64,000 bases of DNA from Adineta vaga. Lineage: Eukaryota; Animalia; Rotifera. The position numbers were made by a program, and so were the translations under genes. Under the pieces are notes generated by a model. It saw only the letters and a list, made by a program, of their open reading frames with translations. It ran no database searches and had not been told where the DNA came from. The first letter of the stretch is position 1, and every line of letters begins with the position of its first letter. Below, one piece after another: positions 1,648 through 59,006 of the stretch. The DNA lies in the NCBI GenBank assembly GCA_021613535.1, contig CP075497.1, forward strand, positions 6,386,001 to 6,450,000, written 5' to 3'.

Positions 1648-4600
1648 ATAATCGAATTCTGTATAATATTCATAAATATGTTCTCAAGAAAAGACATCAA
1701 GTGAAATACTTTCATCATACGGTTCTTTTGTTTTTTCTTTCGTTTTTTTCGTTAAATTCTCCATTTAAACCTCTCTAATACTCAGTTTTGTTTCTGGCGT
1801 TGCGCATCTGTGATTAATGAAATACACATAGAAGAAAAGGAAAAGAAATAATGAGGAAAAAAATGTATTTCTTCTTAGGAAATTAATCTTTTCAAATGAT
1901 TGCTTTGAGTTAGTTTAGATCAAAAAAATATATCTATATATAAAGGGAAAAGAGATAAATCTATCTAAGAGATCAACTCAGGATGATCGTAATTCTTAAA
2001 AATAGAACTAATTTATCGTTTTCTTCTCTTTTTTTTTCACTCCTCGCATATATCTTGCTATATATATTTGCACACATTTAGCAGACTATTCTATTAGATA
2101 TAAACCTGTTTTATTTTCTTTTGTTTTTGTTATTCAATTGATGAGATGAGACAATTCATTTCCTTCAAAGCTCTATATGTATGTACTATTGTGCCTGTGT
2201 TTATGATTATCTCGCTTGATTTTTCACTTCTATATTTCGTTTTTCTCTTCACATTATGCTTTATTCTACGATGGACTTACAGTAAACTATGGGATATTAA
2301 GAACAGTAGTTACTGGAATGGCTTTTTTAAATAAATAAATAAATAAATATATATATATTTCTATTTAAAAAGATATTTTGTGCAAATCTAACGCATCATT
2401 TATTATCGTTCTTAAAAATCTTTACGCTATTTTCCATTTCCGATCGCGTTCGAGGACGAAAAATTGTATTGAATCGAGGAAATGAATTACTAATAAGCGT
2501 ATATAATTATCACAGGAACTTGAGAATAGGTTTTTGATTACAAGAAAGAATCTGAAAAGAATTACTGATTGAAAATGAATTACACAAAATGTCATGGTGA
2601 TATTTATGAGGTTTCATTCTATGAAATTTCATTGTATTCGTCGTGCAAACATAAGAAATGTTGTCGTCTCGAAATGACGATGAGAATTACAAGTAGAAAT
2701 GTTCGTACATCGGAAAAACAGCTCTTTATTAAATTATGATACTATATCAATCTGTAATGTAGATTGATGGAAAACATATGTCGATACTTACTTCAAATCA
2801 TCGATTAATCAAATTTTGGCATCGATTTCATATTTATTTAGTAGATAACGTGTTGAACATCGTATGTAGACTCAAACTTCAGAAATTCATGTTCGTAAAA
2901 TCAAATTAGGATCATTTTTCAATGACATTATAAGTTATCTATATTTGATAAATTTATGAGTATAAAAATGAAATATAAATATTCATCTGTTTTCATTCTT
3001 ACATAACTCATCAAGTATTGAACACGTAGTATGATCTGTTAATTATTCAAACCAATCAAGTAAATTTTGATGAAGGTCATCTATTTCTTTTAAATTCAAC
3101 AGCCGATATGAATCATGAATGATTAGCATAGATAAAATACAATAATCGCGTCCAATAAAAAAGTAATTTATCATCAAAATACAAGGTTACTGTTAATCGT
3201 TCTCTGAATAATAAAAAAATCAGTTCTAATCATGGAGTTTAACACCATTTTCCTAATAAAATCATTTGTTTCGAAAGGTTTGTTAGAATCAAAATGTCGT
3301 AGATTAATCTCCAGAGACATCTTGCAAATAAAAGAATAGTAATTTTTTGATTATTCTACATGGTAATGATATTTATCAAAAGATTAAATTCTTCGATACG
3401 ATAAAACTCGTAGATTGTTATCATTCATTTATTTGCAATACAATCTTTTTTTTTAGCAATATGCAGTCGTAGAATAAAAATATTCTGTACATTTAAAGAT
3501 CAAATCTCACAATGGGGCATACACATATTGTATATACTCTAAAAATTCATTGATTAGATATCACTTTCTATTACGGGACAAATTCTATTCATCTACTTTC
3601 GAACGTTGTTGAAAGTGTAAAGGAAAATAGATGACATTAATATACCATTTTTTTTCCATAACTAGTATGATCCTTGACCTAACCTTCTTTGCTATCCGCT
3701 ATCTAAAAGACTGTCATTTGTTAAATAAAGCTCTTGATTGTAAGAGTCTTATCAAACACGCAATCTCCTATTTAGTCATATGCATTAGAAATGTATTGGA
3801 CAATTTAATGAGGTAGGTTAGCAGGTGCTGTTACAAACTACACGCATTGCCCATCTCTTGTATTTAGTCAATGTGCATACAGAATATTTATAAATGAATG
3901 AAAAAATTTACAAGTGTCACGATAAGTGGATAGAATTCTTTCAAATTTTCTTCTGTACACATAGTGTACTTCAAGTACGCCTTGAAGAACTATGAAAAGA
4001 CGTCTCGGTGTGTATTCTTTGGATAGAAAAGTAGTGCTATTAATATTCAAAAACTAAATCATCACTCTTTTTTCCTCTCATGTACGATAATTATTTCAAA
4101 GGATACAATATGTGTACCCATTTTTATTCATGCGTAATTGTTTCTGGCAGCATCAATGATGAATACATGAAATGAAAAAAGATTCGTTCGCTCTTCTTTT
4201 TTTTTTGTTCGTCAACATACAATATTGGTCTAACATTAGACTTACTTTTTCAGTAGGAGCTGTTCTTTTGCGTTCTCTCTCTCTCTCTTTTTCTCTTCTA
4301 TTCGTGCTTTTTTTCGATTTCTTAGTATACTTGCCAATGTATGACCATTTTGTTTCATTTCTGCTCGTTACGTTTGTACACTAGAAGTATTGGATCACCT
4401 CTCTCCCTCGTTTTGATTTATTCTGTACCTTTCATCAATAGTTTTCTCTTCTCATTCATTTCTTTTTTTTCACGCTTAAATAAAAAAAAACCGATCGATG
4501 TTCTATGCTGCGGTTATGACTATTGTAAGTATATAACTCTTTTTCTCTTCTTTTCTAAAGCATTACAAATCACTAGTGATTAGTTTAAGTTCAAAACTAG

Positions 4601-4858
4601 AACGATTTTCTTTTGATTAATAACGAAATAAATACAATCTAATGATCTTCCTTTTGAAATAATATAAACAGATGTGTTGGGCATCTTATCTCGTTACCAT
4701 TCTGATTACATCACCAAAAGTTGATGGCGACATGCTGTGTATATCTGTTAACCTTTTTTTTTGTATGTATGTATGTCTTCTGATGAAGTGAGTTGTAAGA
4801 TCTGTTGTAGACGAACAATCATTCATATGAACAAGAAGAATAATATTGATTTAAATCA

Positions 4859-6174
4859 ATGGATTTTACTGCTGTCATTGAAAGTGCAAAACGATTCGCT
4901 GGAGGCGAACGAACTGATTATACGTACGATGATCGATTAGTAGATCGTCTTCATAATCGTTACACTGTTGCTGTCTTAGTTTGTTTTTGTATTGCTATTT
5001 CAAGTTATCAATACATTGGTAAGATGAATAGAAACATTTTGTAGAAAAGAGGAGGAGGTAATGAAACTTTTCTTTTTTTTTATAGGCGATCCATTACGTT
5101 GTTGGGTACCAGCTCAATTTAATGGAAACTATGAATCATATACGAATCGATTGTGTTATATTCAAAATACCTATCATGTTCCAAAAAATCAAGTAGTTCC
5201 AAAAGATTATAATTTACGACGTGAAAGAACACTTAAATATTATCAATGGATCAATTTGGTTCTTCTTTTACAAGCACTTTTCTTCAGTTTACCACGTATT
5301 ATTTGGCAATCATTCAATGATAAGATTGGATTATCACTAGGAAATCTTGTTGATGCCGCTAATAAATATGATACATTTGATAGTAGAGATGATCGAGGAA
5401 CAGGTAATGTACAAAAGTATCTATTGAAATGTTTTGTTAAATATTGATTTTCGATTGATATAATTAGTTGTGCAATATATTGCTGATTGTTTACACCGTT
5501 ATGAAGAGTATATCAATCCCCCAAAGCGAGAAAGAGCATCTTTGATACATCGTATGAATCGTCAATGTCGTTTATTTTGTCAAGGTCGAACCGGCGCTTC
5601 GCTTGTTTGTTTTTATTTTGTTGTTAAATTTCTCTATATGATCAATTTAATTCTACAAATTTTATTTCTTCAATATTTTCTCAGTTACTATGAAATGAAT
5701 TATCTTCAATATGGTATTAATGTATTAGGTACATTATTGTCTGGTTTTACATTACCAGAAAGTAAACTCTTTCCACGCATCACATTATGTGATTTTCAAA
5801 TACGTGAATTAGGTGAACAACATCATTATACAGTCGAATGTATTCTTGTTATAAATATATTCATTGAGAAAATGTATTTTATTTTATGGATATGGTTTTG
5901 GGTTTTACTATTAATAACAATTATTGATACAATACGTTCTATCTATCGAATATTTATACGACATTCTCGTAATATTTTTATTACACAACATCTAGAATTA
6001 ATCGTTAGAAATCGTGTCTCCAAAGAAACACTATTTCGACATTTTTTGCGTTACTTTCCTATTGATAATCTTTTTGCTTTGTGGATTGTGGGACTGAATT
6101 CCAATTCATTGATTGTCGCTGAAATTCTCGATGAATTATTTTCTCGTAAATTAAATCATGGTTCTGATGTGTAA
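4859..6174 (+). CDS. Innexin (gap junction protein); exons 4859-5018, 5086-5403, 5468-6174
   Basis: Innexin motifs: DDRLVDRLH, GDPLRCWVP, YTNRLCY, YYQW, FPRITLCDF, ECILVINIFIEKMY..LWIW. GT-AG junctions keep the frame. Confidence 0.95.
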
Positions 6175-54589: not shown

Positions 54590-55444
54590 ATGGGTAACGT
54601 TAACAAGTCGATATGTGGAGCGTAATATATTTGTTTGATTTTATAAAAACAAAATGTGTTTGTTCGTTGATTTTATAGAGTCGATACAATAACAGACGCC
54701 ATACGTCGTAGAAGGAAACCGAAACATGTCAATGCAATATTAATTGTCGATGTGCAATATGATTTTATTGAAGGTTCACTAGCTCTTAAAAATTGTCCCA
54801 GTCAACATCAAGGAGAACAAGTGATACCTCTGATAAATAAACTATTACAAGATTCAAGTTTTGATGTTGTTGTTTATACGCAAGATTGGCATACACCTGA
54901 TCATATCTCATTTTATGATAATTTACCTTTACGAGCGCATTTACTTGCTAAAGATTCGAAACCAGCACATGAATTGAAATTATTTGATACAGCAATATTT
55001 TCACTAGACGACGGTAAACTAGCTCGTGTTGAACAAATTCTTTGGCCTGCTCATTGTATACAACACACGCATGGTGCAGAATTACATCGCGACTTATCCT
55101 TATTAAAAGCAAATAAAAAACGGCAAATAATCAATCTACTGAAAGGTTTTGATAGTGATATTGATTCTTATTCAGCTTTTTGGGATAATATGAAAATTCG
55201 TGAAACGACATTACATGCTAAATTAAAAGAATTCAATGTAACACAAGTTTTTATCGTTGGAATTGCAACAGATGTTTGTGTTTATTCAACAGCATTACAT
55301 GCACTTGAAAATGGTTATAAAACTCATATTATAAAAGATGCATGTCGTGGTGTTGATGAAAACAACATTAATCTACGTCTTGATGAATTGATTGCGCATA
55401 ATTGTTCAGTGATACAGGCAGCTGATGTGAAAGACTTACTATGA
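54590..55444 (+). CDS. Nicotinamidase (PncA/isochorismatase family); exons 54590-54621, 54679-55444
   Basis: ILIVDVQYDF, YTQDWH, LWPAHCIQ, KG.DS.IDSYSAFWDN and GIATDVCV supply the catalytic D/K/C and metal-binding D/H/H residues. A 57-nt intron links an upstream ATG in frame. Confidence 0.93.
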
Positions 55445-55645
55445 ATGTATGAAGAAGAAAAAAACAGTTGTTTTATTTTATTTGAAAAGTGTTTCGTGAG
55501 TAAATAAGTGACAAAAACAGAATTATTAGAATGATTAAGATTAAATGGGACAGAAAAAAATTAAAGAGAAAAAAAACCATAGAGAAGAAAGAGAGAACCA
55601 AAAACTTTAAGGAACGAAAAAGAAAAAGATAAGCGAGGAACACGA

Positions 55646-56317
55646 TTACATAAGAAGACAGCCAGCATGTTTGTTGATAAGACGATGACCTGATTGATAA
55701 TTTTGAAGGAATTCTAATTGACGAACATTAAATGATCCACGGCGTCGTGAACGAACAAAATCAATTGATTCTTGTCGATTCATTCCAGCCTCACGTAAGG
55801 CCATTGCAACAAGAACAGGTGATCTAAATATCAACGAATATATATGATAAAAACTTCTAAAAATTAAATGTAGAATAAACTAACCGTCCAAGACCATGAA
55901 CACAATGAACAAGAATACAACCATTTTTATTTTCTTTAACAATATTAAACCATTTTTCACGAACAATTGAATCAGGTGTACTTCCGTCAGGATATTCAAG
56001 ATTCTAAAATATGAAATTTAAAATTCATTGAATTCATTCTACGAAATAAGTACATACGTAAACTTTAATACCGGCTGCTTCAATTGGTTTTGTATCATAA
56101 GTTTTTTCTGAAACACGAACTAATGTTGTGACGCCATATTTTAAACAAGTCTAGTAAAAAAATCAATAAAAATATATATGATCATAAGATGTTTTCAAGA
56201 ATCTCTTACTTCAATGAATGATTGAAGATTTTCGTCAGCTGGACTGTCCGTAATTAAAAAGCGAAGATGTTTATAACGAAGTTCTGTCATTGTTGGATTA
56301 TTTAATGGTGAAGGCAT
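55646..56317 (-). CDS. PRL-1: PRL-type protein tyrosine phosphatase (PTP4A), 4 coding exons, CaaX prenylation
   Basis: LRFLITDSP, KYGVTTLVRV, HCVHGLGR|SPVLVA, VRSRRRGSFN..QLEFL and C-terminal CLLM. Confidence 0.93.
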
Positions 56318-56500
56318 GATTTTCTTAGTAATAATAATTATGTTCCTTGTGAAATAAAGTCAAGAAAACTTTTGTTTTTTTGTTGAATATTTTAATTAAT
56401 TTCTAATTTTGGTTGAAACAAGGCACCAATCAAATTTATTTGGACGATATCGATATGGATAATATCGATAGGAGATGGATAGAGGATTTTGGCGTACTAG

Positions 56501-56654
56501 TCAATATTGCGCTCGGCAGAATTCGCCCGAGAGCGTGCAATCGCGCACGTATTCGGTCTAAAAATAGTGAACATCAAATATCTTTCATTCAATAATCAAA
56601 TCGAAATCTTACCGCTTGGTTAGGCGTATATTCACCGGCAACAGTTGTCCTCAT
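56501..56654 (-). promoter_or_regulatory. Spliced upstream ORF (32 aa) in the PRL 5' leader
   Basis: ATG at 56654 gives 14 codons to 56613. A 55-nt GTAAG...TTTTTAG intron spans 56612-56558, then 18 codons and TGA at 56503-56501. Peptide: MRTTVAGEYTPNQATEYVRDCTLSGEFCRAQY. Confidence 0.7.
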
Positions 56655-59006
56655 CGAATAATAGCAAAACGTGATCGTCGAAACTTCCAAACAGAAGCTG
56701 GACAAAATAAATATAATCTAGAAAATAATATTATACTTTATGAATGTTTCACAAGTAAAGAATATGAGAAGTGAGAGAGAAAAAACGAAACATTTCTAAT
56801 GCTTGTGCACACCCACATATACGTATATATATATATGTATGTGCGCTTCAAGGCTTGAATACATGTCCGCACATCTACATACATATATTCTTTGAAAAGA
56901 AGAGAAAAAAATCACAAACATTTCGACGACGATGATTACAATAAGAAGAAAAAAAGAAAGCAACGAAATAGAATCAATCGTTTTGGGTATATATAGACTA
57001 TTTCGAAAGCGATGGAAAAGAGAAAACATGTTATTAAAAAATGACGTCATATTAAACTTTAGACGAGATTTCGGATGATGGCACGAGTTATCGGAGTTAT
57101 ATAAAATATTTTTTATGATGATGCAAACGAGATTTTATTATTAATTATGTTAGTAAAATAAACGAGAGAAAAGAAAGGTTAGCAGTCGTCAATAAAAGAT
57201 TATTATTCTTATCGGTTCGATACAGATGCGACAAGCAAATCAAATCGAAGGCTTAGATTCTTTCATTTTTTTTTTGGAGTGTATATATATATATATCTTC
57301 GAGTGCACACGACTACTCTATGTTAAGCGAAAGAAAAAGAAAAAGAGACAAAAAAGAACGCTACAGCTATTACTCTCATATCAGTAACAAATCCAGAAAG
57401 AACATATAGAGAATCTATAGAGAGCTATTTTCTTCGTAAAAGTGCGTGAGATGTCAAAGAACAAATCATAAGAGACACAAAGGTCTTTAAGACAAATTCG
57501 AGTATGGAATGATCATTTGCTGTTCTCATCAAAACAGATGAGAAAAACTTGATGACACGTTTAACGTCACTGTCAAAATTAATTGATCGATTCAGAAAGA
57601 AAAGACATACGCAATAAACACATAAATAAATGATTGGAAATATCTACATATTACCTTTCAATAAAATACAAAAAGAAAAACAAACTTTTACTAGACTTGT
57701 ATTTATAGCAACCATAGTAACTACGTCGTTCGGTAATGTTGAAATAACGTAACAATAAACATAATGAATCATTCAATAAAATTTCATTTACAAGAAAAAA
57801 AAGGAAACATGATGTCATGTTTTATCTCGCACGATTACATTTGTCATAAATCCCTCCCCAGATTAAAAGACTCCACAAAATAGAAGACTCCTTCCTGTCA
57901 CAAGACCCTTTTTAGATTTTTATACAGGGACATCATAGAAGACCACGGGGAGGGAGAAGTTATATAGAATTAAAACTAAACCTTCTAGTATTACTGATTT
58001 TTCATCGATGAAATAAATAAATATATAAAAAAAATCAAATGTCTATGTTTTCCATTCATTTAATTACATAAATAGTGCATAAGATTGTTACACTATTCTA
58101 TTCTATCTAAAAGCAATTAGATGCTTATTAATCATAATCTCTCTTATCTAATAATAAACTTTTTATTATTTAACGTAAGGTTATATTCAAAATGAAGATA
58201 AAGATCATATAATCATACTATATTGACAAAAGTCAACATCAAAAACATGCAAATGAATGAAAGATGTTTTCTAAGCTATTTTGTTAGATAAAAGATTGAT
58301 GTACGAAGAAATATATTATTAACGCCTCTTCTGTTAACCTCGGTTACCCATACTAATCATCAAAAAAATGATGATAAACACAATTTTCTATCTCACATAA
58401 AAAAACCTATAAATCAAAAACGATTCCTGTCGTACACAAACATCTGCATATATTTGAGAATAATTTCTGAATAGGAAATAAGAAAATCATATATTTCCGA
58501 TCAACAAAAAGAAACACACATACAAATGAAGTTTTCTAAGTTACCTATATTATTTGACGTAAACTAAACGTTTTTCATCAAGACTTTACCCATCATATGA
58601 TTTCCAGTAGATTAAATTAGAAAAAGAAAACAATTTTATGCGATAGAATAAACAAGAATTTCATTTCCGATTCAAGTCGCAAATGAATGAATGAACTTTT
58701 CAACAACAACAACGTGCTGATTGGATGAAATGGTTAGCAAATGAGAATAAATTGAAATATGAAATAAAGCGAAGAAATTGAAAACAGAAAAAGAAATTAA
58801 TTTCAAAAGATGATTTTTTGGATATTTTATTTGAAATTCCTATGGAAAATCGTTATTGATCCGTTAAATAATTTGTCATTGGTCGAAATTCGTGCTCTTT
58901 TTTGTTCTTTGTCAGCGAACGTCTTGCTCTTGCTCGAAGCGAAGAAAAGAAGAACGCGGGAATATGTTTTATGTATATTAATTATTTGTCTTAAACTGTC
59001 ATAGTT

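What the first reader, a model, noticed from the sequence alone, without database searches (positions are those of the whole stretch)
56317..56717. Spliced, GC-rich 32-codon uORF in the PRL phosphatase leader: candidate Mg2+-sensing translational switch outside vertebrates
Seen: the PRL leader contains two unusually GC-rich blocks separated by a clean 55-nt AT-rich intron. Spliced, they give ATG...TGA = MRTTVAGEYTPNQATEYVRDCTLSGEFCRAQY*, ending 183 nt before the PRL ATG. The ORF track misses it because it is short and split. Known: mammalian PRL-1/2 (PTP4A1/2) translation is controlled by a conserved uORF that responds to Mg2+, and PRLs regulate CNNM Mg2+ transporters. Inference: this could be an ancient or convergent peptide-dependent Mg2+ feedback element in a lophotrochozoan. 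The 3' block (GCTCTCGGGC...GCCGAGC) could also form a hairpin.
Basis: partly seen in the sequence, partly recalled or inferred. Interest (0 to 1): 0.85.

Follow-up and report, generated by a model that had tools for sequence, protein, structure and literature searches.

The report
Ancient PRL leader ORF, leaky stop
The leader of a bdelloid rotifer PRL phosphatase mRNA carries a small upstream reading frame that matches the upstream frame in the leader of shark and teleost PTP4A1 genes (probably the magnesium-responsive one described in mammals), and in rotifers it ends at a leaky stop followed by a second, strongly conserved peptide that was probably made by reading through that stop.

Summary
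Spliced RNA contigs from 3 studies remove the 55-nt intron, and one contig links both GC-rich blocks to the whole PRL coding sequence. The mRNA is trans-spliced to the bdelloid spliced leader at 56717, and the uORF AUG is the only AUG in the 345-nt leader.

All 20 rotifer PRL loci with upstream DNA keep the uORF. That includes the ohnolog on another chromosome, Rotaria, and both Didymodactylos copies.

Its C-terminal core, SG[DE][FY]C.AQ[HY], recurs in the leader ORF of shark and teleost PTP4A1, beside a mollusc PRL gene, and in two invertebrate PRL transcripts. The family is therefore probably old, not convergent.

New here: the rotifer stop is UGA-CUAG, the classic readthrough context. The frame stays open for 24-34 more codons, and length changes come in whole codons. 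It ends in ..NKFDWCLISTKIRD*, which evolves like protein (omega 0.03, 2dlnL 110). The uORF itself gives omega 0.6-0.8, not significant.

The most likely reading is a regulatory uORF with programmed readthrough that controls PRL translation. Magnesium sensing is untested. The proposed hairpin is not supported by covariation.

The parts
56718..56719 (-). AG acceptor for spliced-leader trans-splicing; the mature mRNA body starts at 56717
   Evidence: run X6 record 16 runs on beyond 56719 with 11 letters whose reverse complement is AACTTACCAAG; transcript contig L005 begins CAAGAG|ATTATATTT. AACTTACCAAGAG followed by GT occurs 53 times in the genome and 0 times in the control. (PMC1925144): bdelloids trans-splice a 23-nt leader onto more than 50% of their mRNAs.
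56613..56717 (-). First exon of the PRL leader (105 nt), holding the uORF start
56652..56654 (-). uORF AUG in a conserved weak context, TATTC[GC]ATG[AC], with T at -3; the only AUG in the leader
   Evidence: context in 19 loci; no other ATG in the leaders
56613..56654 (-). uORF codons 1-14 (MRTTVAGEYTPNQA), the variable N-terminal half
56558..56612 (-). 55-nt phase-0 intron inside the uORF (GTAAG..TAG)
   Evidence: the joint appears in 4 runs; the same intron phase, 50-65 nt long, in all genomic loci.
56501..56557 (-). uORF codons 15-32 plus TGA (TEYVRDCTLSGEFCRAQY*); this part holds the conserved core SGEFCRAQY
   Evidence: 12 of the 18 codons are rare in this genome.
56495..56503 (-). Stop context TGA-CTA-GTA, that is UGA CUAG, the readthrough-prone context
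   Evidence: TGACTAG in 17 of 21 listed loci. TGACTAG in the second D. carnosus copy L041 as well, giving 18 of 22 loci. (PMC5133446): UGA CUA(G) is the consensus for high readthrough in mammals.
56396..56500 (-). In-frame extension of 34 codons plus TAA (LVRQNPLSISYRYYPYRYRPNKFDWCLVSTKIRN*); the last 16 codons lie at 56399-56446
   Evidence: open in frame in all lineages that keep UGA-CUA; lengths of 34/33/29/25/24 codons; omega 0.03 with 2dlnL 110; 7/4/12 variable columns by codon position.
56318..56395 (-). 78-nt AUG-free, poorly conserved spacer between the extension stop and the PRL AUG
   Evidence: identity 0.36 against 0.84 just upstream
56210..56317 (-). PRL CDS exon 1 (start ATG at 56317-56315)
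56058..56150 (-). PRL CDS exon 2
   Evidence: joints
55885..56003 (-). PRL CDS exon 3 (first part of the HCVHGLGR active-site motif)
55646..55823 (-). PRL CDS exon 4, ending in the CAAX box CLLM and the stop codon
55459..55465 (-). Poly(A) addition sites of the PRL mRNA
   Evidence: table 7: run X6 has loose ends of T runs on the + strand

Best explanation
This is the rotifer version of the conserved-peptide uORF of PRL/PTP4A phosphatase mRNAs, and in bdelloids it has gained a programmed stop-codon readthrough module.

Shown:
- The PRL mRNA is trans-spliced to the spliced leader.
- Its leader holds a single AUG, in a conserved weak context.
- That AUG opens a 32-codon ORF split by a phase-0 intron.
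- The ORF's C-terminal core, SG[ED][FY]C[RQK]AQ[YH], is shared with the leader ORF of shark and teleost PTP4A1 and of invertebrate PRL transcripts.
- The ORF ends at UGA-CUAG.
- The same frame stays open for 24-34 further codons and ends in a peptide under strong purifying selection.

Inferred:
- Part of the scanning ribosomes start at the uAUG. The others leak past it to the PRL AUG.
- At the UGA, helped by the conserved nascent peptide and a run of rare codons, ribosomes take one of two routes. They may terminate, leaving 183 nt in which to re-initiate at the PRL AUG. Or they may read through.
- Ribosomes that read through finish only 30-82 nt from the PRL AUG after a 67-codon ORF. They are then unlikely to re-initiate, or they stall on the conserved ..KFDWCLISTKIRD end.
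- The ratio of termination to readthrough would therefore set PRL output.
- By analogy with the vertebrate element, the signal may be Mg2+, which is known to loosen decoding accuracy. This last step is conjecture.
For: Transcript structure:
- all four introns are spliced out in 3-4 runs, and one contig joins the uORF exons to the CDS.
- spliced leader at the 5' end of the mRNA.

Conservation among rotifers:
- the ohnolog is 73% identical and keeps the uORF.
- 20 of 20 rotifer PRL loci with upstream DNA keep it, including both D. carnosus copies.
- the uAUG context is conserved.
- there are no other AUGs in the leaders.

Homology outside rotifers:
- the motif is present in shark, teleost, Elysia and two invertebrate transcripts.
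- the motif pattern hits nothing else in about 159 kb read in six frames.

Readthrough:
- the stop context is UGA-CUAG, and the open extension varies in length only by whole codons.
- UGA CUA(G) is the high-readthrough consensus.
- omega 0.26 in frame, against 0.99 and 2.72 in the other two frames, which also hold stops.
- maximum-likelihood omega 0.03, with 2dlnL 110 against omega = 1.
- identity drops from 0.84 to 0.36 at the extension stop, and variation is richest at third codon positions.
- the one lineage with a UAA stop has no extension.

Physiological context:
- CNNM genes are present in this genome.
- Mg2+ affects decoding accuracy (PMC5814885, abstract only).
Against: - There is no ribosome profiling, peptide or reporter evidence, so translation of the uORF and of the extension is inferred from evolution alone.
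- Within bdelloids the uORF proper has omega 0.6-0.8, not significantly below 1. Its conservation is as much at the nucleotide level as at the peptide level.
- The codon alignments are tiny (16-31 codons), and the tree was estimated from the same data.
- In D. carnosus the extension is open and equal in length in both copies, but it lacks the KFDWC motif.
- I could not read Hardy et al. 2019, so I infer rather than verify that the shark and teleost leader ORF is the published Mg2+-sensitive uORF.
- The Elysia copy lies on the strand opposite to the PRL gene model, beside an assembly gap.
- Readthrough at UGA-CUAG in mammals is only a few per cent.
Confidence: 0.6

Rival explanations
1. A plain 32-codon regulatory uORF that always ends at the TGA. 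On this view the conserved block downstream is a non-coding RNA element, such as a protein-binding site or a structure that acts on re-initiation.
For: - Nucleotide conservation is high right across the stop (TGCCGAGCGCAAYATTGACTAGTACG is almost invariant).
- Short palindromes (ATATCGATAT, CAAAT..ATTTG) lie in the downstream block.
Against: - The block evolves like protein: omega 0.03, and variation is richest at third codon positions (7/4/12).
- Frames 1 and 2 hold stops and give omega of about 1 or more.
- All length changes are whole codons.
- There is no covariation and no fold better than shuffles.
- No Rfam family matches.
Confidence: 0.15
2. The extension is translated, but not by readthrough. 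Instead ribosomes start it on their own at a non-AUG codon, or a rare alternative splice joins it in frame.
For: - Non-AUG uORFs are common in animals (PMC9082881).
- Contigs drop rare splice variants, so a minor form cannot be excluded (tool notes).
Against: - There is no AUG in the extension in any of the 19 loci.
- The first in-frame codons after the stop (CTA GTA CGC) are not near-cognate start codons.
- Whole-codon length changes lie directly after the stop, so translation must begin at or before it.
- The extension shares the uORF frame in every lineage, and it is absent in the one lineage whose stop is TAA.
- Only one splice joint is seen in the leader.
Confidence: 0.1
3. The UGA encodes selenocysteine, and the whole 67-codon frame is a small selenoprotein.
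For: An in-frame UGA with conserved coding sequence on both sides is how selenoprotein genes look.
Against: - No SECIS-like match on the mRNA, 3' UTR included, at E up to 1.
- The L010 lineage has TAA there and no extension.
- No homolog has a Cys codon at that place. Other animals have D, G, L, F or K there.
- The UGA-CUAG context is typical of readthrough.
Confidence: 0.03
4. The likeness to the vertebrate PTP4A leader ORF is convergent or due to chance, and the rotifer uORF arose on its own.
For: - Only about 9 residues align, and only C, A and Q are invariant.
- The intron sits 9 codons before the SG in rotifers, whereas the acceptor is 16 codons before it in shark.
Against: - The host gene family and the location are the same.
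- The motif pattern occurs nowhere else in the window, in 71 kb of other loci, or in 23.6 kb of shark DNA read in six frames.
- Intermediate forms exist in a mollusc and in two other invertebrate PRL leaders.
Confidence: 0.1

Closest known systems
Mg2+-sensitive conserved uORF of vertebrate PTP4A1/PTP4A2 (PRL-1/2) mRNAs (Hardy et al. 2019, as described in PMC11855589, PMC10083557 and PMC7530721)
   Same: - It is an AUG uORF in the 5' leader of a PRL phosphatase mRNA.
- It shares the peptide core SG[DE][FY]C.AQ[HY] with the leader ORF read here from shark and teleost PTP4A1 DNA.
- The published element acts through its peptide sequence, and its partner family CNNM is present in this genome.
   Different: - In rotifers the frame stops directly after AQ[YH], at UGA-CUAG. 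Vertebrates have 6 more codons (D/G-I/V-Y-A-D/E-K) before their stop.
- Rotifers add a conserved in-frame extension of 24-34 codons.
- The uORF is split by a short intron and sits on a trans-spliced mRNA.
- A response to Mg2+ is untested.
Programmed stop-codon readthrough at UGA CUA(G), as in MDH1x, LDHBx, AQP4 and many Drosophila genes (PMC5133446, PMC3840789)
   Same: - The stop context is identical.
- An open in-frame extension follows and evolves like coding sequence.
   Different: The known cases extend main proteins at their C-terminus. Here the stop that is read through belongs to a regulatory uORF, so the likely output is control of the downstream ORF rather than a protein isoform.
AMD1 (AdoMetDC) mRNA: uORF MAGDIS with metabolite-dependent stalling at termination, plus stalling after readthrough beyond the main stop
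   Same: It combines a small conserved peptide that acts at termination with a conserved peptide after a stop that is read through, which may arrest ribosomes.
   Different: In AMD1 the two elements lie at opposite ends of the mRNA. Here both would lie within one leader.
GCN4/ATF4-type control by re-initiation after short uORFs (PMC4793210, PMC4748822)
   Same: - The uORF is short, and a long AUG-free spacer leads to the main AUG.
- UGA-C is the leakiest stop tetranucleotide.
   Different: There is a single uORF with a conserved peptide. No second inhibitory uORF is present, and the extension could play that role.

Membership tests
PTP4A/PRL conserved-peptide uORF | Lies in the 5' leader of a PRL/PTP4A mRNA, upstream of the main AUG and not overlapping it | tested here: met
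   one contig joins the uORF exons to the PRL CDS; the PRL identity of the CDS (HCVHGLGR motif, CAAX box, 80-90% identity to rotifer proteins annotated as protein tyrosine phosphatase type IVA 3).
PTP4A/PRL conserved-peptide uORF | Shared peptide core with the vertebrate element | tested here: met
   window LSGEFCRAQY against shark and teleost GSGDYCQAQH. C, A and Q are invariant in 12 sequences, and the pattern gives no false hits in about 159 kb read in six frames. Caveat: I infer, and have not verified, that the shark and teleost ORF is the published one.
PTP4A/PRL conserved-peptide uORF | Purifying selection on the encoded peptide | tested here: inconclusive
   omega 0.80 (whole uORF) and 0.61 (C-terminal half) within bdelloids, with 2dlnL 0.8 and 1.8. 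The core is nearly invariant at both the amino-acid and the nucleotide level.
PTP4A/PRL conserved-peptide uORF | Represses the main ORF in a peptide-sequence-dependent way | not testable with these tools
   Needs reporters with frameshifted uORFs, as in PMC7530721.
PTP4A/PRL conserved-peptide uORF | Translation of PRL responds to intracellular Mg2+ | not testable with these tools
   Only context is available: CNNM genes are present.
Programmed stop-codon readthrough | Leaky stop context (UGA followed by CUA(G)) | tested here: met
   TGACTAG in 17 of 21 listed loci; also in L041, giving 18 of 22 loci. L042 has TGACTAT. One search gives the consensus.
Programmed stop-codon readthrough | Open in-frame extension with protein-like evolution and whole-codon length changes | tested here: met
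Programmed stop-codon readthrough | Direct detection of ribosomes or of product beyond the stop | not testable with these tools
   No ribosome profiling or proteomics is on hand. The RNA runs are kept as contigs only.
Selenoprotein gene | SECIS element on the mRNA | tested here: not met
   no SECIS family matches window 55300-56900 at E up to 1.
Selenoprotein gene | Homologs with Cys in place of Sec | tested here: not met
   that position holds TAA in the L010 lineage and D, G, L, F or K in other animals.
SL trans-spliced bdelloid mRNA | Spliced-leader sequence joined at an AG acceptor | tested here: met
   the 5 pairs show 0 changes on both sides and a covariation term of -0.11. The helix is broken in L042, and searches show the 5' arm lost in D. 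carnosus; z-score -0.9.

The most novel reading that the evidence does not exclude
The leader is a readthrough-based Mg2+ gauge. Free Mg2+ would set how often the uORF's UGA-CUAG is decoded by a near-cognate tRNA. Ribosomes that terminate can re-initiate on PRL. Ribosomes that read through are spent on, or arrested by, the conserved ..KFDWCLISTKIRD peptide. High Mg2+ would therefore lower PRL and low Mg2+ would raise it, closing the PRL-CNNM feedback loop by a mechanism not described for any uORF.
Probability: 0.15. Interest if true: 0.9.

Novelty: new variant of a known kind. Interest (0 to 1): 0.72.

Why it matters
PRL phosphatases control cellular magnesium through CNNM proteins. In mammals they are themselves controlled by a small upstream reading frame whose mechanism is still unclear.

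If the same peptide core sits in the PRL leader of rotifers, a mollusc, other invertebrates, sharks and teleosts, the switch would date back to early bilaterians. That also narrows the essential part to about nine residues ending in C.AQ[HY], which is a concrete target for mutagenesis and ribosome structures.

The rotifer form adds something not described for this element, and to my knowledge (literature only partly searched) not for any conserved uORF. It has a conserved leaky stop with a strongly constrained peptide behind it. If readthrough is confirmed, it would be a natural case where the choice between termination and readthrough in a leader sets the output of the main gene, and it offers a simple physical route by which an ion could be sensed.

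Whether conservation outside vertebrates is already listed in the supplements of Takahashi et al. 2020 or in Hardy et al. 2019 could not be checked here.

Tried and rejected
Literature that could not be reached:
- Hardy et al. 2019 (PMC6386685) is not held.
- The supplements of Takahashi et al. 2020 are not held.
- A full-text search for the vertebrate peptide string found nothing.
- Mackowiak et al. 2015 does not mention PTP4A.
- The published peptide and its reported taxonomic range therefore remain unverified.

Hypotheses tested and rejected or left open:
- Rfam gave no SECIS and no other family. The only hits were weak mir-297 and mir-3149 matches upstream, far below the gathering scores.
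- Consensus RNA structure around the stop has no covariation. The single-sequence fold is no better than shuffles.
- dN/dS of the uORF proper does not differ significantly from 1.

Searches that gave nothing useful:
- P0004, the first full-length-looking hit for the last PRL exon, turned out to be a mis-predicted protein.
- No uORF motif was found in the leader of P0196 (L053).
- Elysia: the motif lies on the strand opposite to the PRL model, beside a run of N, so linkage to the PRL mRNA is not shown.
- The search of earlier findings held nothing on this element apart from the finding itself.

Procedure:
It was rerun with a reference to the window.
- The spliced uORF and the spliced PRL model were never sent to a search tool. 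Searches used single exons by reference.
Human and other mammalian PTP4A records listed were not fetched.
Full report
**1. What is in the window**

- The uORF ATG is at 56654-56652, followed by 14 codons up to 56613.
- A 55-nt GT..AG intron lies at 56612-56558.
- 18 more codons follow, then TGA at 56503-56501.
- After 183 nt comes the ATG of a four-exon PRL gene: 56317-56210, 56150-56058, 56003-55885 and 55823-55646.
- The PRL protein has the active-site motif HCVHGLGR and the CAAX end CLLM.

The two uORF parts have GC 0.50 and 0.56. This compares with 0.24 in the intron, 0.27 in the rest of the leader, 0.35 in the PRL CDS and 0.31 in the window. The high GC comes from codons that are rare here. 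12 of the 18 codons of the second part make up 18% or less of their synonymous family in the long open frames of the window.

**2. Genome**

The assembly has 100.8 Mb in 6 contigs. A second PRL copy on contig 3 encodes the first 38 residues of P0170, named Adineta vaga I4U23_013802, exactly. The window is therefore from A. vaga or a very close relative.

**3. Transcript evidence**

- Contigs of 4 runs from 3 studies carry the joint 56557|56613. At least 3 of these runs also carry each of the three CDS introns.
- One 720-nt contig (run X2, record 7) runs from 55760 to 56708 with all four introns removed. This links the uORF exons to the PRL CDS.
- No other joint occurs in the leader.
- Poly(A) tails start at about 55459-55465.

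At the 5' end, one contig continues beyond 56719 with letters whose reverse complement is AACTTACCAAG. A metatranscriptome contig of a related species begins CAAGAG|ATTATATTT. AACTTACCAAGAG followed by GT occurs 53 times in the genome, mostly in head-to-head pairs, and 0 times in the control. Bdelloids are known to trans-splice a 23-nt leader onto more than half of their mRNAs (PMC1925144).

The mature leader is therefore the spliced leader plus 56717-56613 plus 56557-56318. The uAUG is its only AUG, where shuffles give 5.5 on average (P = 0.02).

**4. Conservation among rotifers**

I searched with the last PRL exon by reference. I then searched with full-length rotifer proteins that the tools returned and with their alignment against metagenome contigs. 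Loci were fetched.

Two PRL lineages exist, and both occur in Adineta and in Rotaria. The window belongs to one lineage and the contig-3 copy to the other.

Every rotifer locus with upstream DNA has the element: 18 loci, L042, L040 and L041. Across these loci:
- The uORF has 32 codons. It has 33 in L042, 33 in L041 (15 + 18 codons) and 34 in the L010 lineage.
- The phase-0 intron sits after codon 14, 50-65 nt long in the window's close relatives; in the divergent L042, L010 and L041 it follows codon 15 or 16, and in L041 it is longer.
- The uAUG context TATTC[GC]ATG[AC] is the same.
- There is no other AUG anywhere in the leader.
- The N-terminal half varies. The C-terminal half reads TE[YF]V..CT[LIV][SLA]GE[FY]CR[AG]Q[YH].

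Within bdelloids, codon models give omega 0.80 for the uORF and 0.61 for its C-terminal half. Neither differs significantly from 1 (2dlnL 0.8 and 1.8). Variable columns are spread evenly over the codon positions. The last six codons, the stop and the next eight bases are almost invariant as nucleotides, even in Didymodactylos.

**5. Link to other animals**

A shark PTP4A1 gene model (P0220) has an N-terminal extension that contains GSGDYCQAQH. I read the underlying DNA in several species.

| Source | Locus | Peptide |
|---|---|---|
| Shark | L044 | QFCGVLGRTFMEFLKGSGDYCQAQHDIYADK* |
| Teleost Prochilodus | L052 | ..MEFLKGSGDYCQAQHGVYAEK* |
| Mollusc Elysia | L045 | ..MEFVTNSGDYCQAQHLGGVREE* |
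| Unnamed invertebrate PRL transcript | L046 | MELLKSSGEFCKAQYFFAK* |
| Unnamed invertebrate PRL transcript | L047 | ..EARYCPAQHK* |

- The shark ORF lies in a leader exon about 300 nt before the PTP4A1 start.
- The Elysia ORF lies about 1 kb from the PRL gene model, but on the other strand and beside an assembly gap.

In the alignment of 12 sequences, C, A and Q are invariant and the core is [SG][GA][DE][FY]C.AQ[HY]. A pattern for this core hits only these uORFs in the 64-kb window, in 71 kb of other loci and in 23.6 kb of shark DNA, each read in six frames. Homology is thus much more likely than chance.

The published Mg2+-sensitive uORF of PTP4A1/2 represses translation in a peptide-dependent way (PMC11855589; PMC7530721; PMC10083557). 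I could not read the original paper. That the shark and teleost ORF is that element is therefore an inference.

**6.

In 18 of 22 loci the stop is TGA followed by CTAG. L042 has TGA CTAT. UGA CUA(G) is the consensus for high readthrough in mammals (PMC5133446).

In every lineage that keeps this context, the uORF frame stays open for 34, 33, 29, 25 or 24 more codons, so all length changes are whole codons. In most lineages it ends in [SA][ND]KFDWC[LY][IV]S[ST]K[IL]R[NDES]*. In the window this is 56500-56396, LVRQNPLSISYRYYPYRYRPNKFDWCLVSTKIRN*, ending 78 nt before the PRL AUG.

Evidence that the last 16 codons evolve as protein:
- A spanning-tree count gives 18 synonymous and 21 non-synonymous changes, omega 0.26. 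Frames 1 and 2 give 0.99 and 2.72, and both hold stops.
- A maximum-likelihood codon model gives omega 0.03, with 2dlnL 110 against omega = 1.
- Variable columns number 7, 4 and 12 at codon positions 1, 2 and 3.
- Mean pairwise identity falls from 0.84 to 0.36 at the extension stop.

Further points bearing on how the extension is translated:
- It has no AUG, and the first in-frame codons after the stop are not near-cognate starts.
- The one lineage whose uORF ends in TAA (L010, L011, L013) has no extension. Its uORF stop lies 51 nt from the PRL AUG.
- Both Didymodactylos copies keep UGA-CUAG and an open 29-codon extension of equal length ending in TAA TAA, but with a different sequence.
- No SECIS or other Rfam family is present.

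**7. Reading**

Shown:
- An expressed, trans-spliced PRL mRNA whose leader holds one conserved uORF that is homologous to the PTP4A leader ORF of other animals.
- A conserved in-frame segment that evolves as protein, behind a readthrough-type stop.

Inferred:
- The uAUG's conserved weak context lets part of the ribosomes leak through to the PRL AUG.
- Those that translate the uORF meet a slow or leaky termination site.
- Termination leaves 183 nt in which to re-initiate.
- Readthrough produces a 67-codon product ending 30-82 nt from the PRL AUG, which should prevent re-initiation or arrest the ribosome.

Conjecture:
- Mg2+ sets this ratio. It is known to lower decoding accuracy (PMC5814885, abstract only).
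- CNNM genes, the known partners of PRL, are present in the genome.

Rivals and my weights:
- An RNA element instead of a translated extension: 0.15.
- Independent initiation or a rare splice form: 0.1.
- Selenocysteine: 0.03.
- Convergence with the vertebrate uORF: 0.1.

**8. Novelty**

The uORF itself is a new member of a known family. Its presence outside vertebrates may already be listed in supplements I could not read. A conserved readthrough extension on a regulatory uORF is, to my knowledge, not described, so I class the whole as a new variant of a known kind.

**9. Limits**

- The codon alignments are short, and their trees come from the same data.
- The metagenome loci are unnamed species, and some may be close relatives of each other.
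- There is no translation data.
- The spliced models were never sent to search tools. Joins were made only inside scripts.

Noticed in passing
G000 genome-wide, e.g. C6:6374731-6374911 (11 kb before the window); loci L049-L051: There are 53 copies of the spliced-leader 3' end followed by GT, mostly in head-to-head pairs about 166 nt apart. These are presumably the SL RNA genes, arranged as inverted pairs.
   Followed up: partly
window 54752-55444 (+): An isochorismatase/nicotinamidase-like ORF lies tail to tail with PRL. The same neighbour follows PRL in Rotaria sordida (L003, L004) and in Didymodactylos carnosus (L040), so this gene pair has stayed together throughout the bdelloids.
   Followed up: partly
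window about 56666-56683 (-): A leader stretch before the uAUG, TTTCGACGA.CACGT, is conserved in Adineta, in Rotaria and in the transcript contigs, although the frame there does not look coding. It is unexplained.
   Followed up: no
window 56807-56888: An imperfect palindrome of alternating purines and pyrimidines lies just upstream of the trans-splice acceptor. It gives weak mir-297 and mir-3149 matches (the mir-297 match on both strands; E 0.16-0.55, scores far below gathering). This is probably chance.
   Followed up: partly
L010, L011, L013 (metagenome contigs), about 1030-1200 in L010: One rotifer lineage keeps a 34-codon uORF with a TAA stop but has lost the whole extension. Its uORF stop lies 51 nt from the PRL AUG. 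This is a natural deletion variant, useful for comparison.
   Followed up: partly
L044:13590-13610 (shark), L045 about 5011-5020 (-) (Elysia): In shark and mollusc the leader ORF exon starts at an acceptor site, and the codons before the Met are conserved (F.G..G[RH]TF|MEF). That ORF may therefore also begin in an upstream exon, as the rotifer one does. The acceptor is 16 codons before the SG, against 9 in rotifers.
   Followed up: no
window 56930-57182: A low-depth contig (4.4) of run X1 covers the region upstream of the trans-splice site. It could be outron or precursor RNA, or an upstream transcript.
   Followed up: no
L041 (D. carnosus, GCA_905249995.1), 3001-5693: The 181-residue PRL gene model starts about 660 nt upstream of the uORF's second exon and so runs through the uORF. 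The real PRL start (MPVKRFLNPTHTEIKYK...) lies downstream of the uORF, so the model's N-terminus looks mis-predicted.
   Followed up: partly
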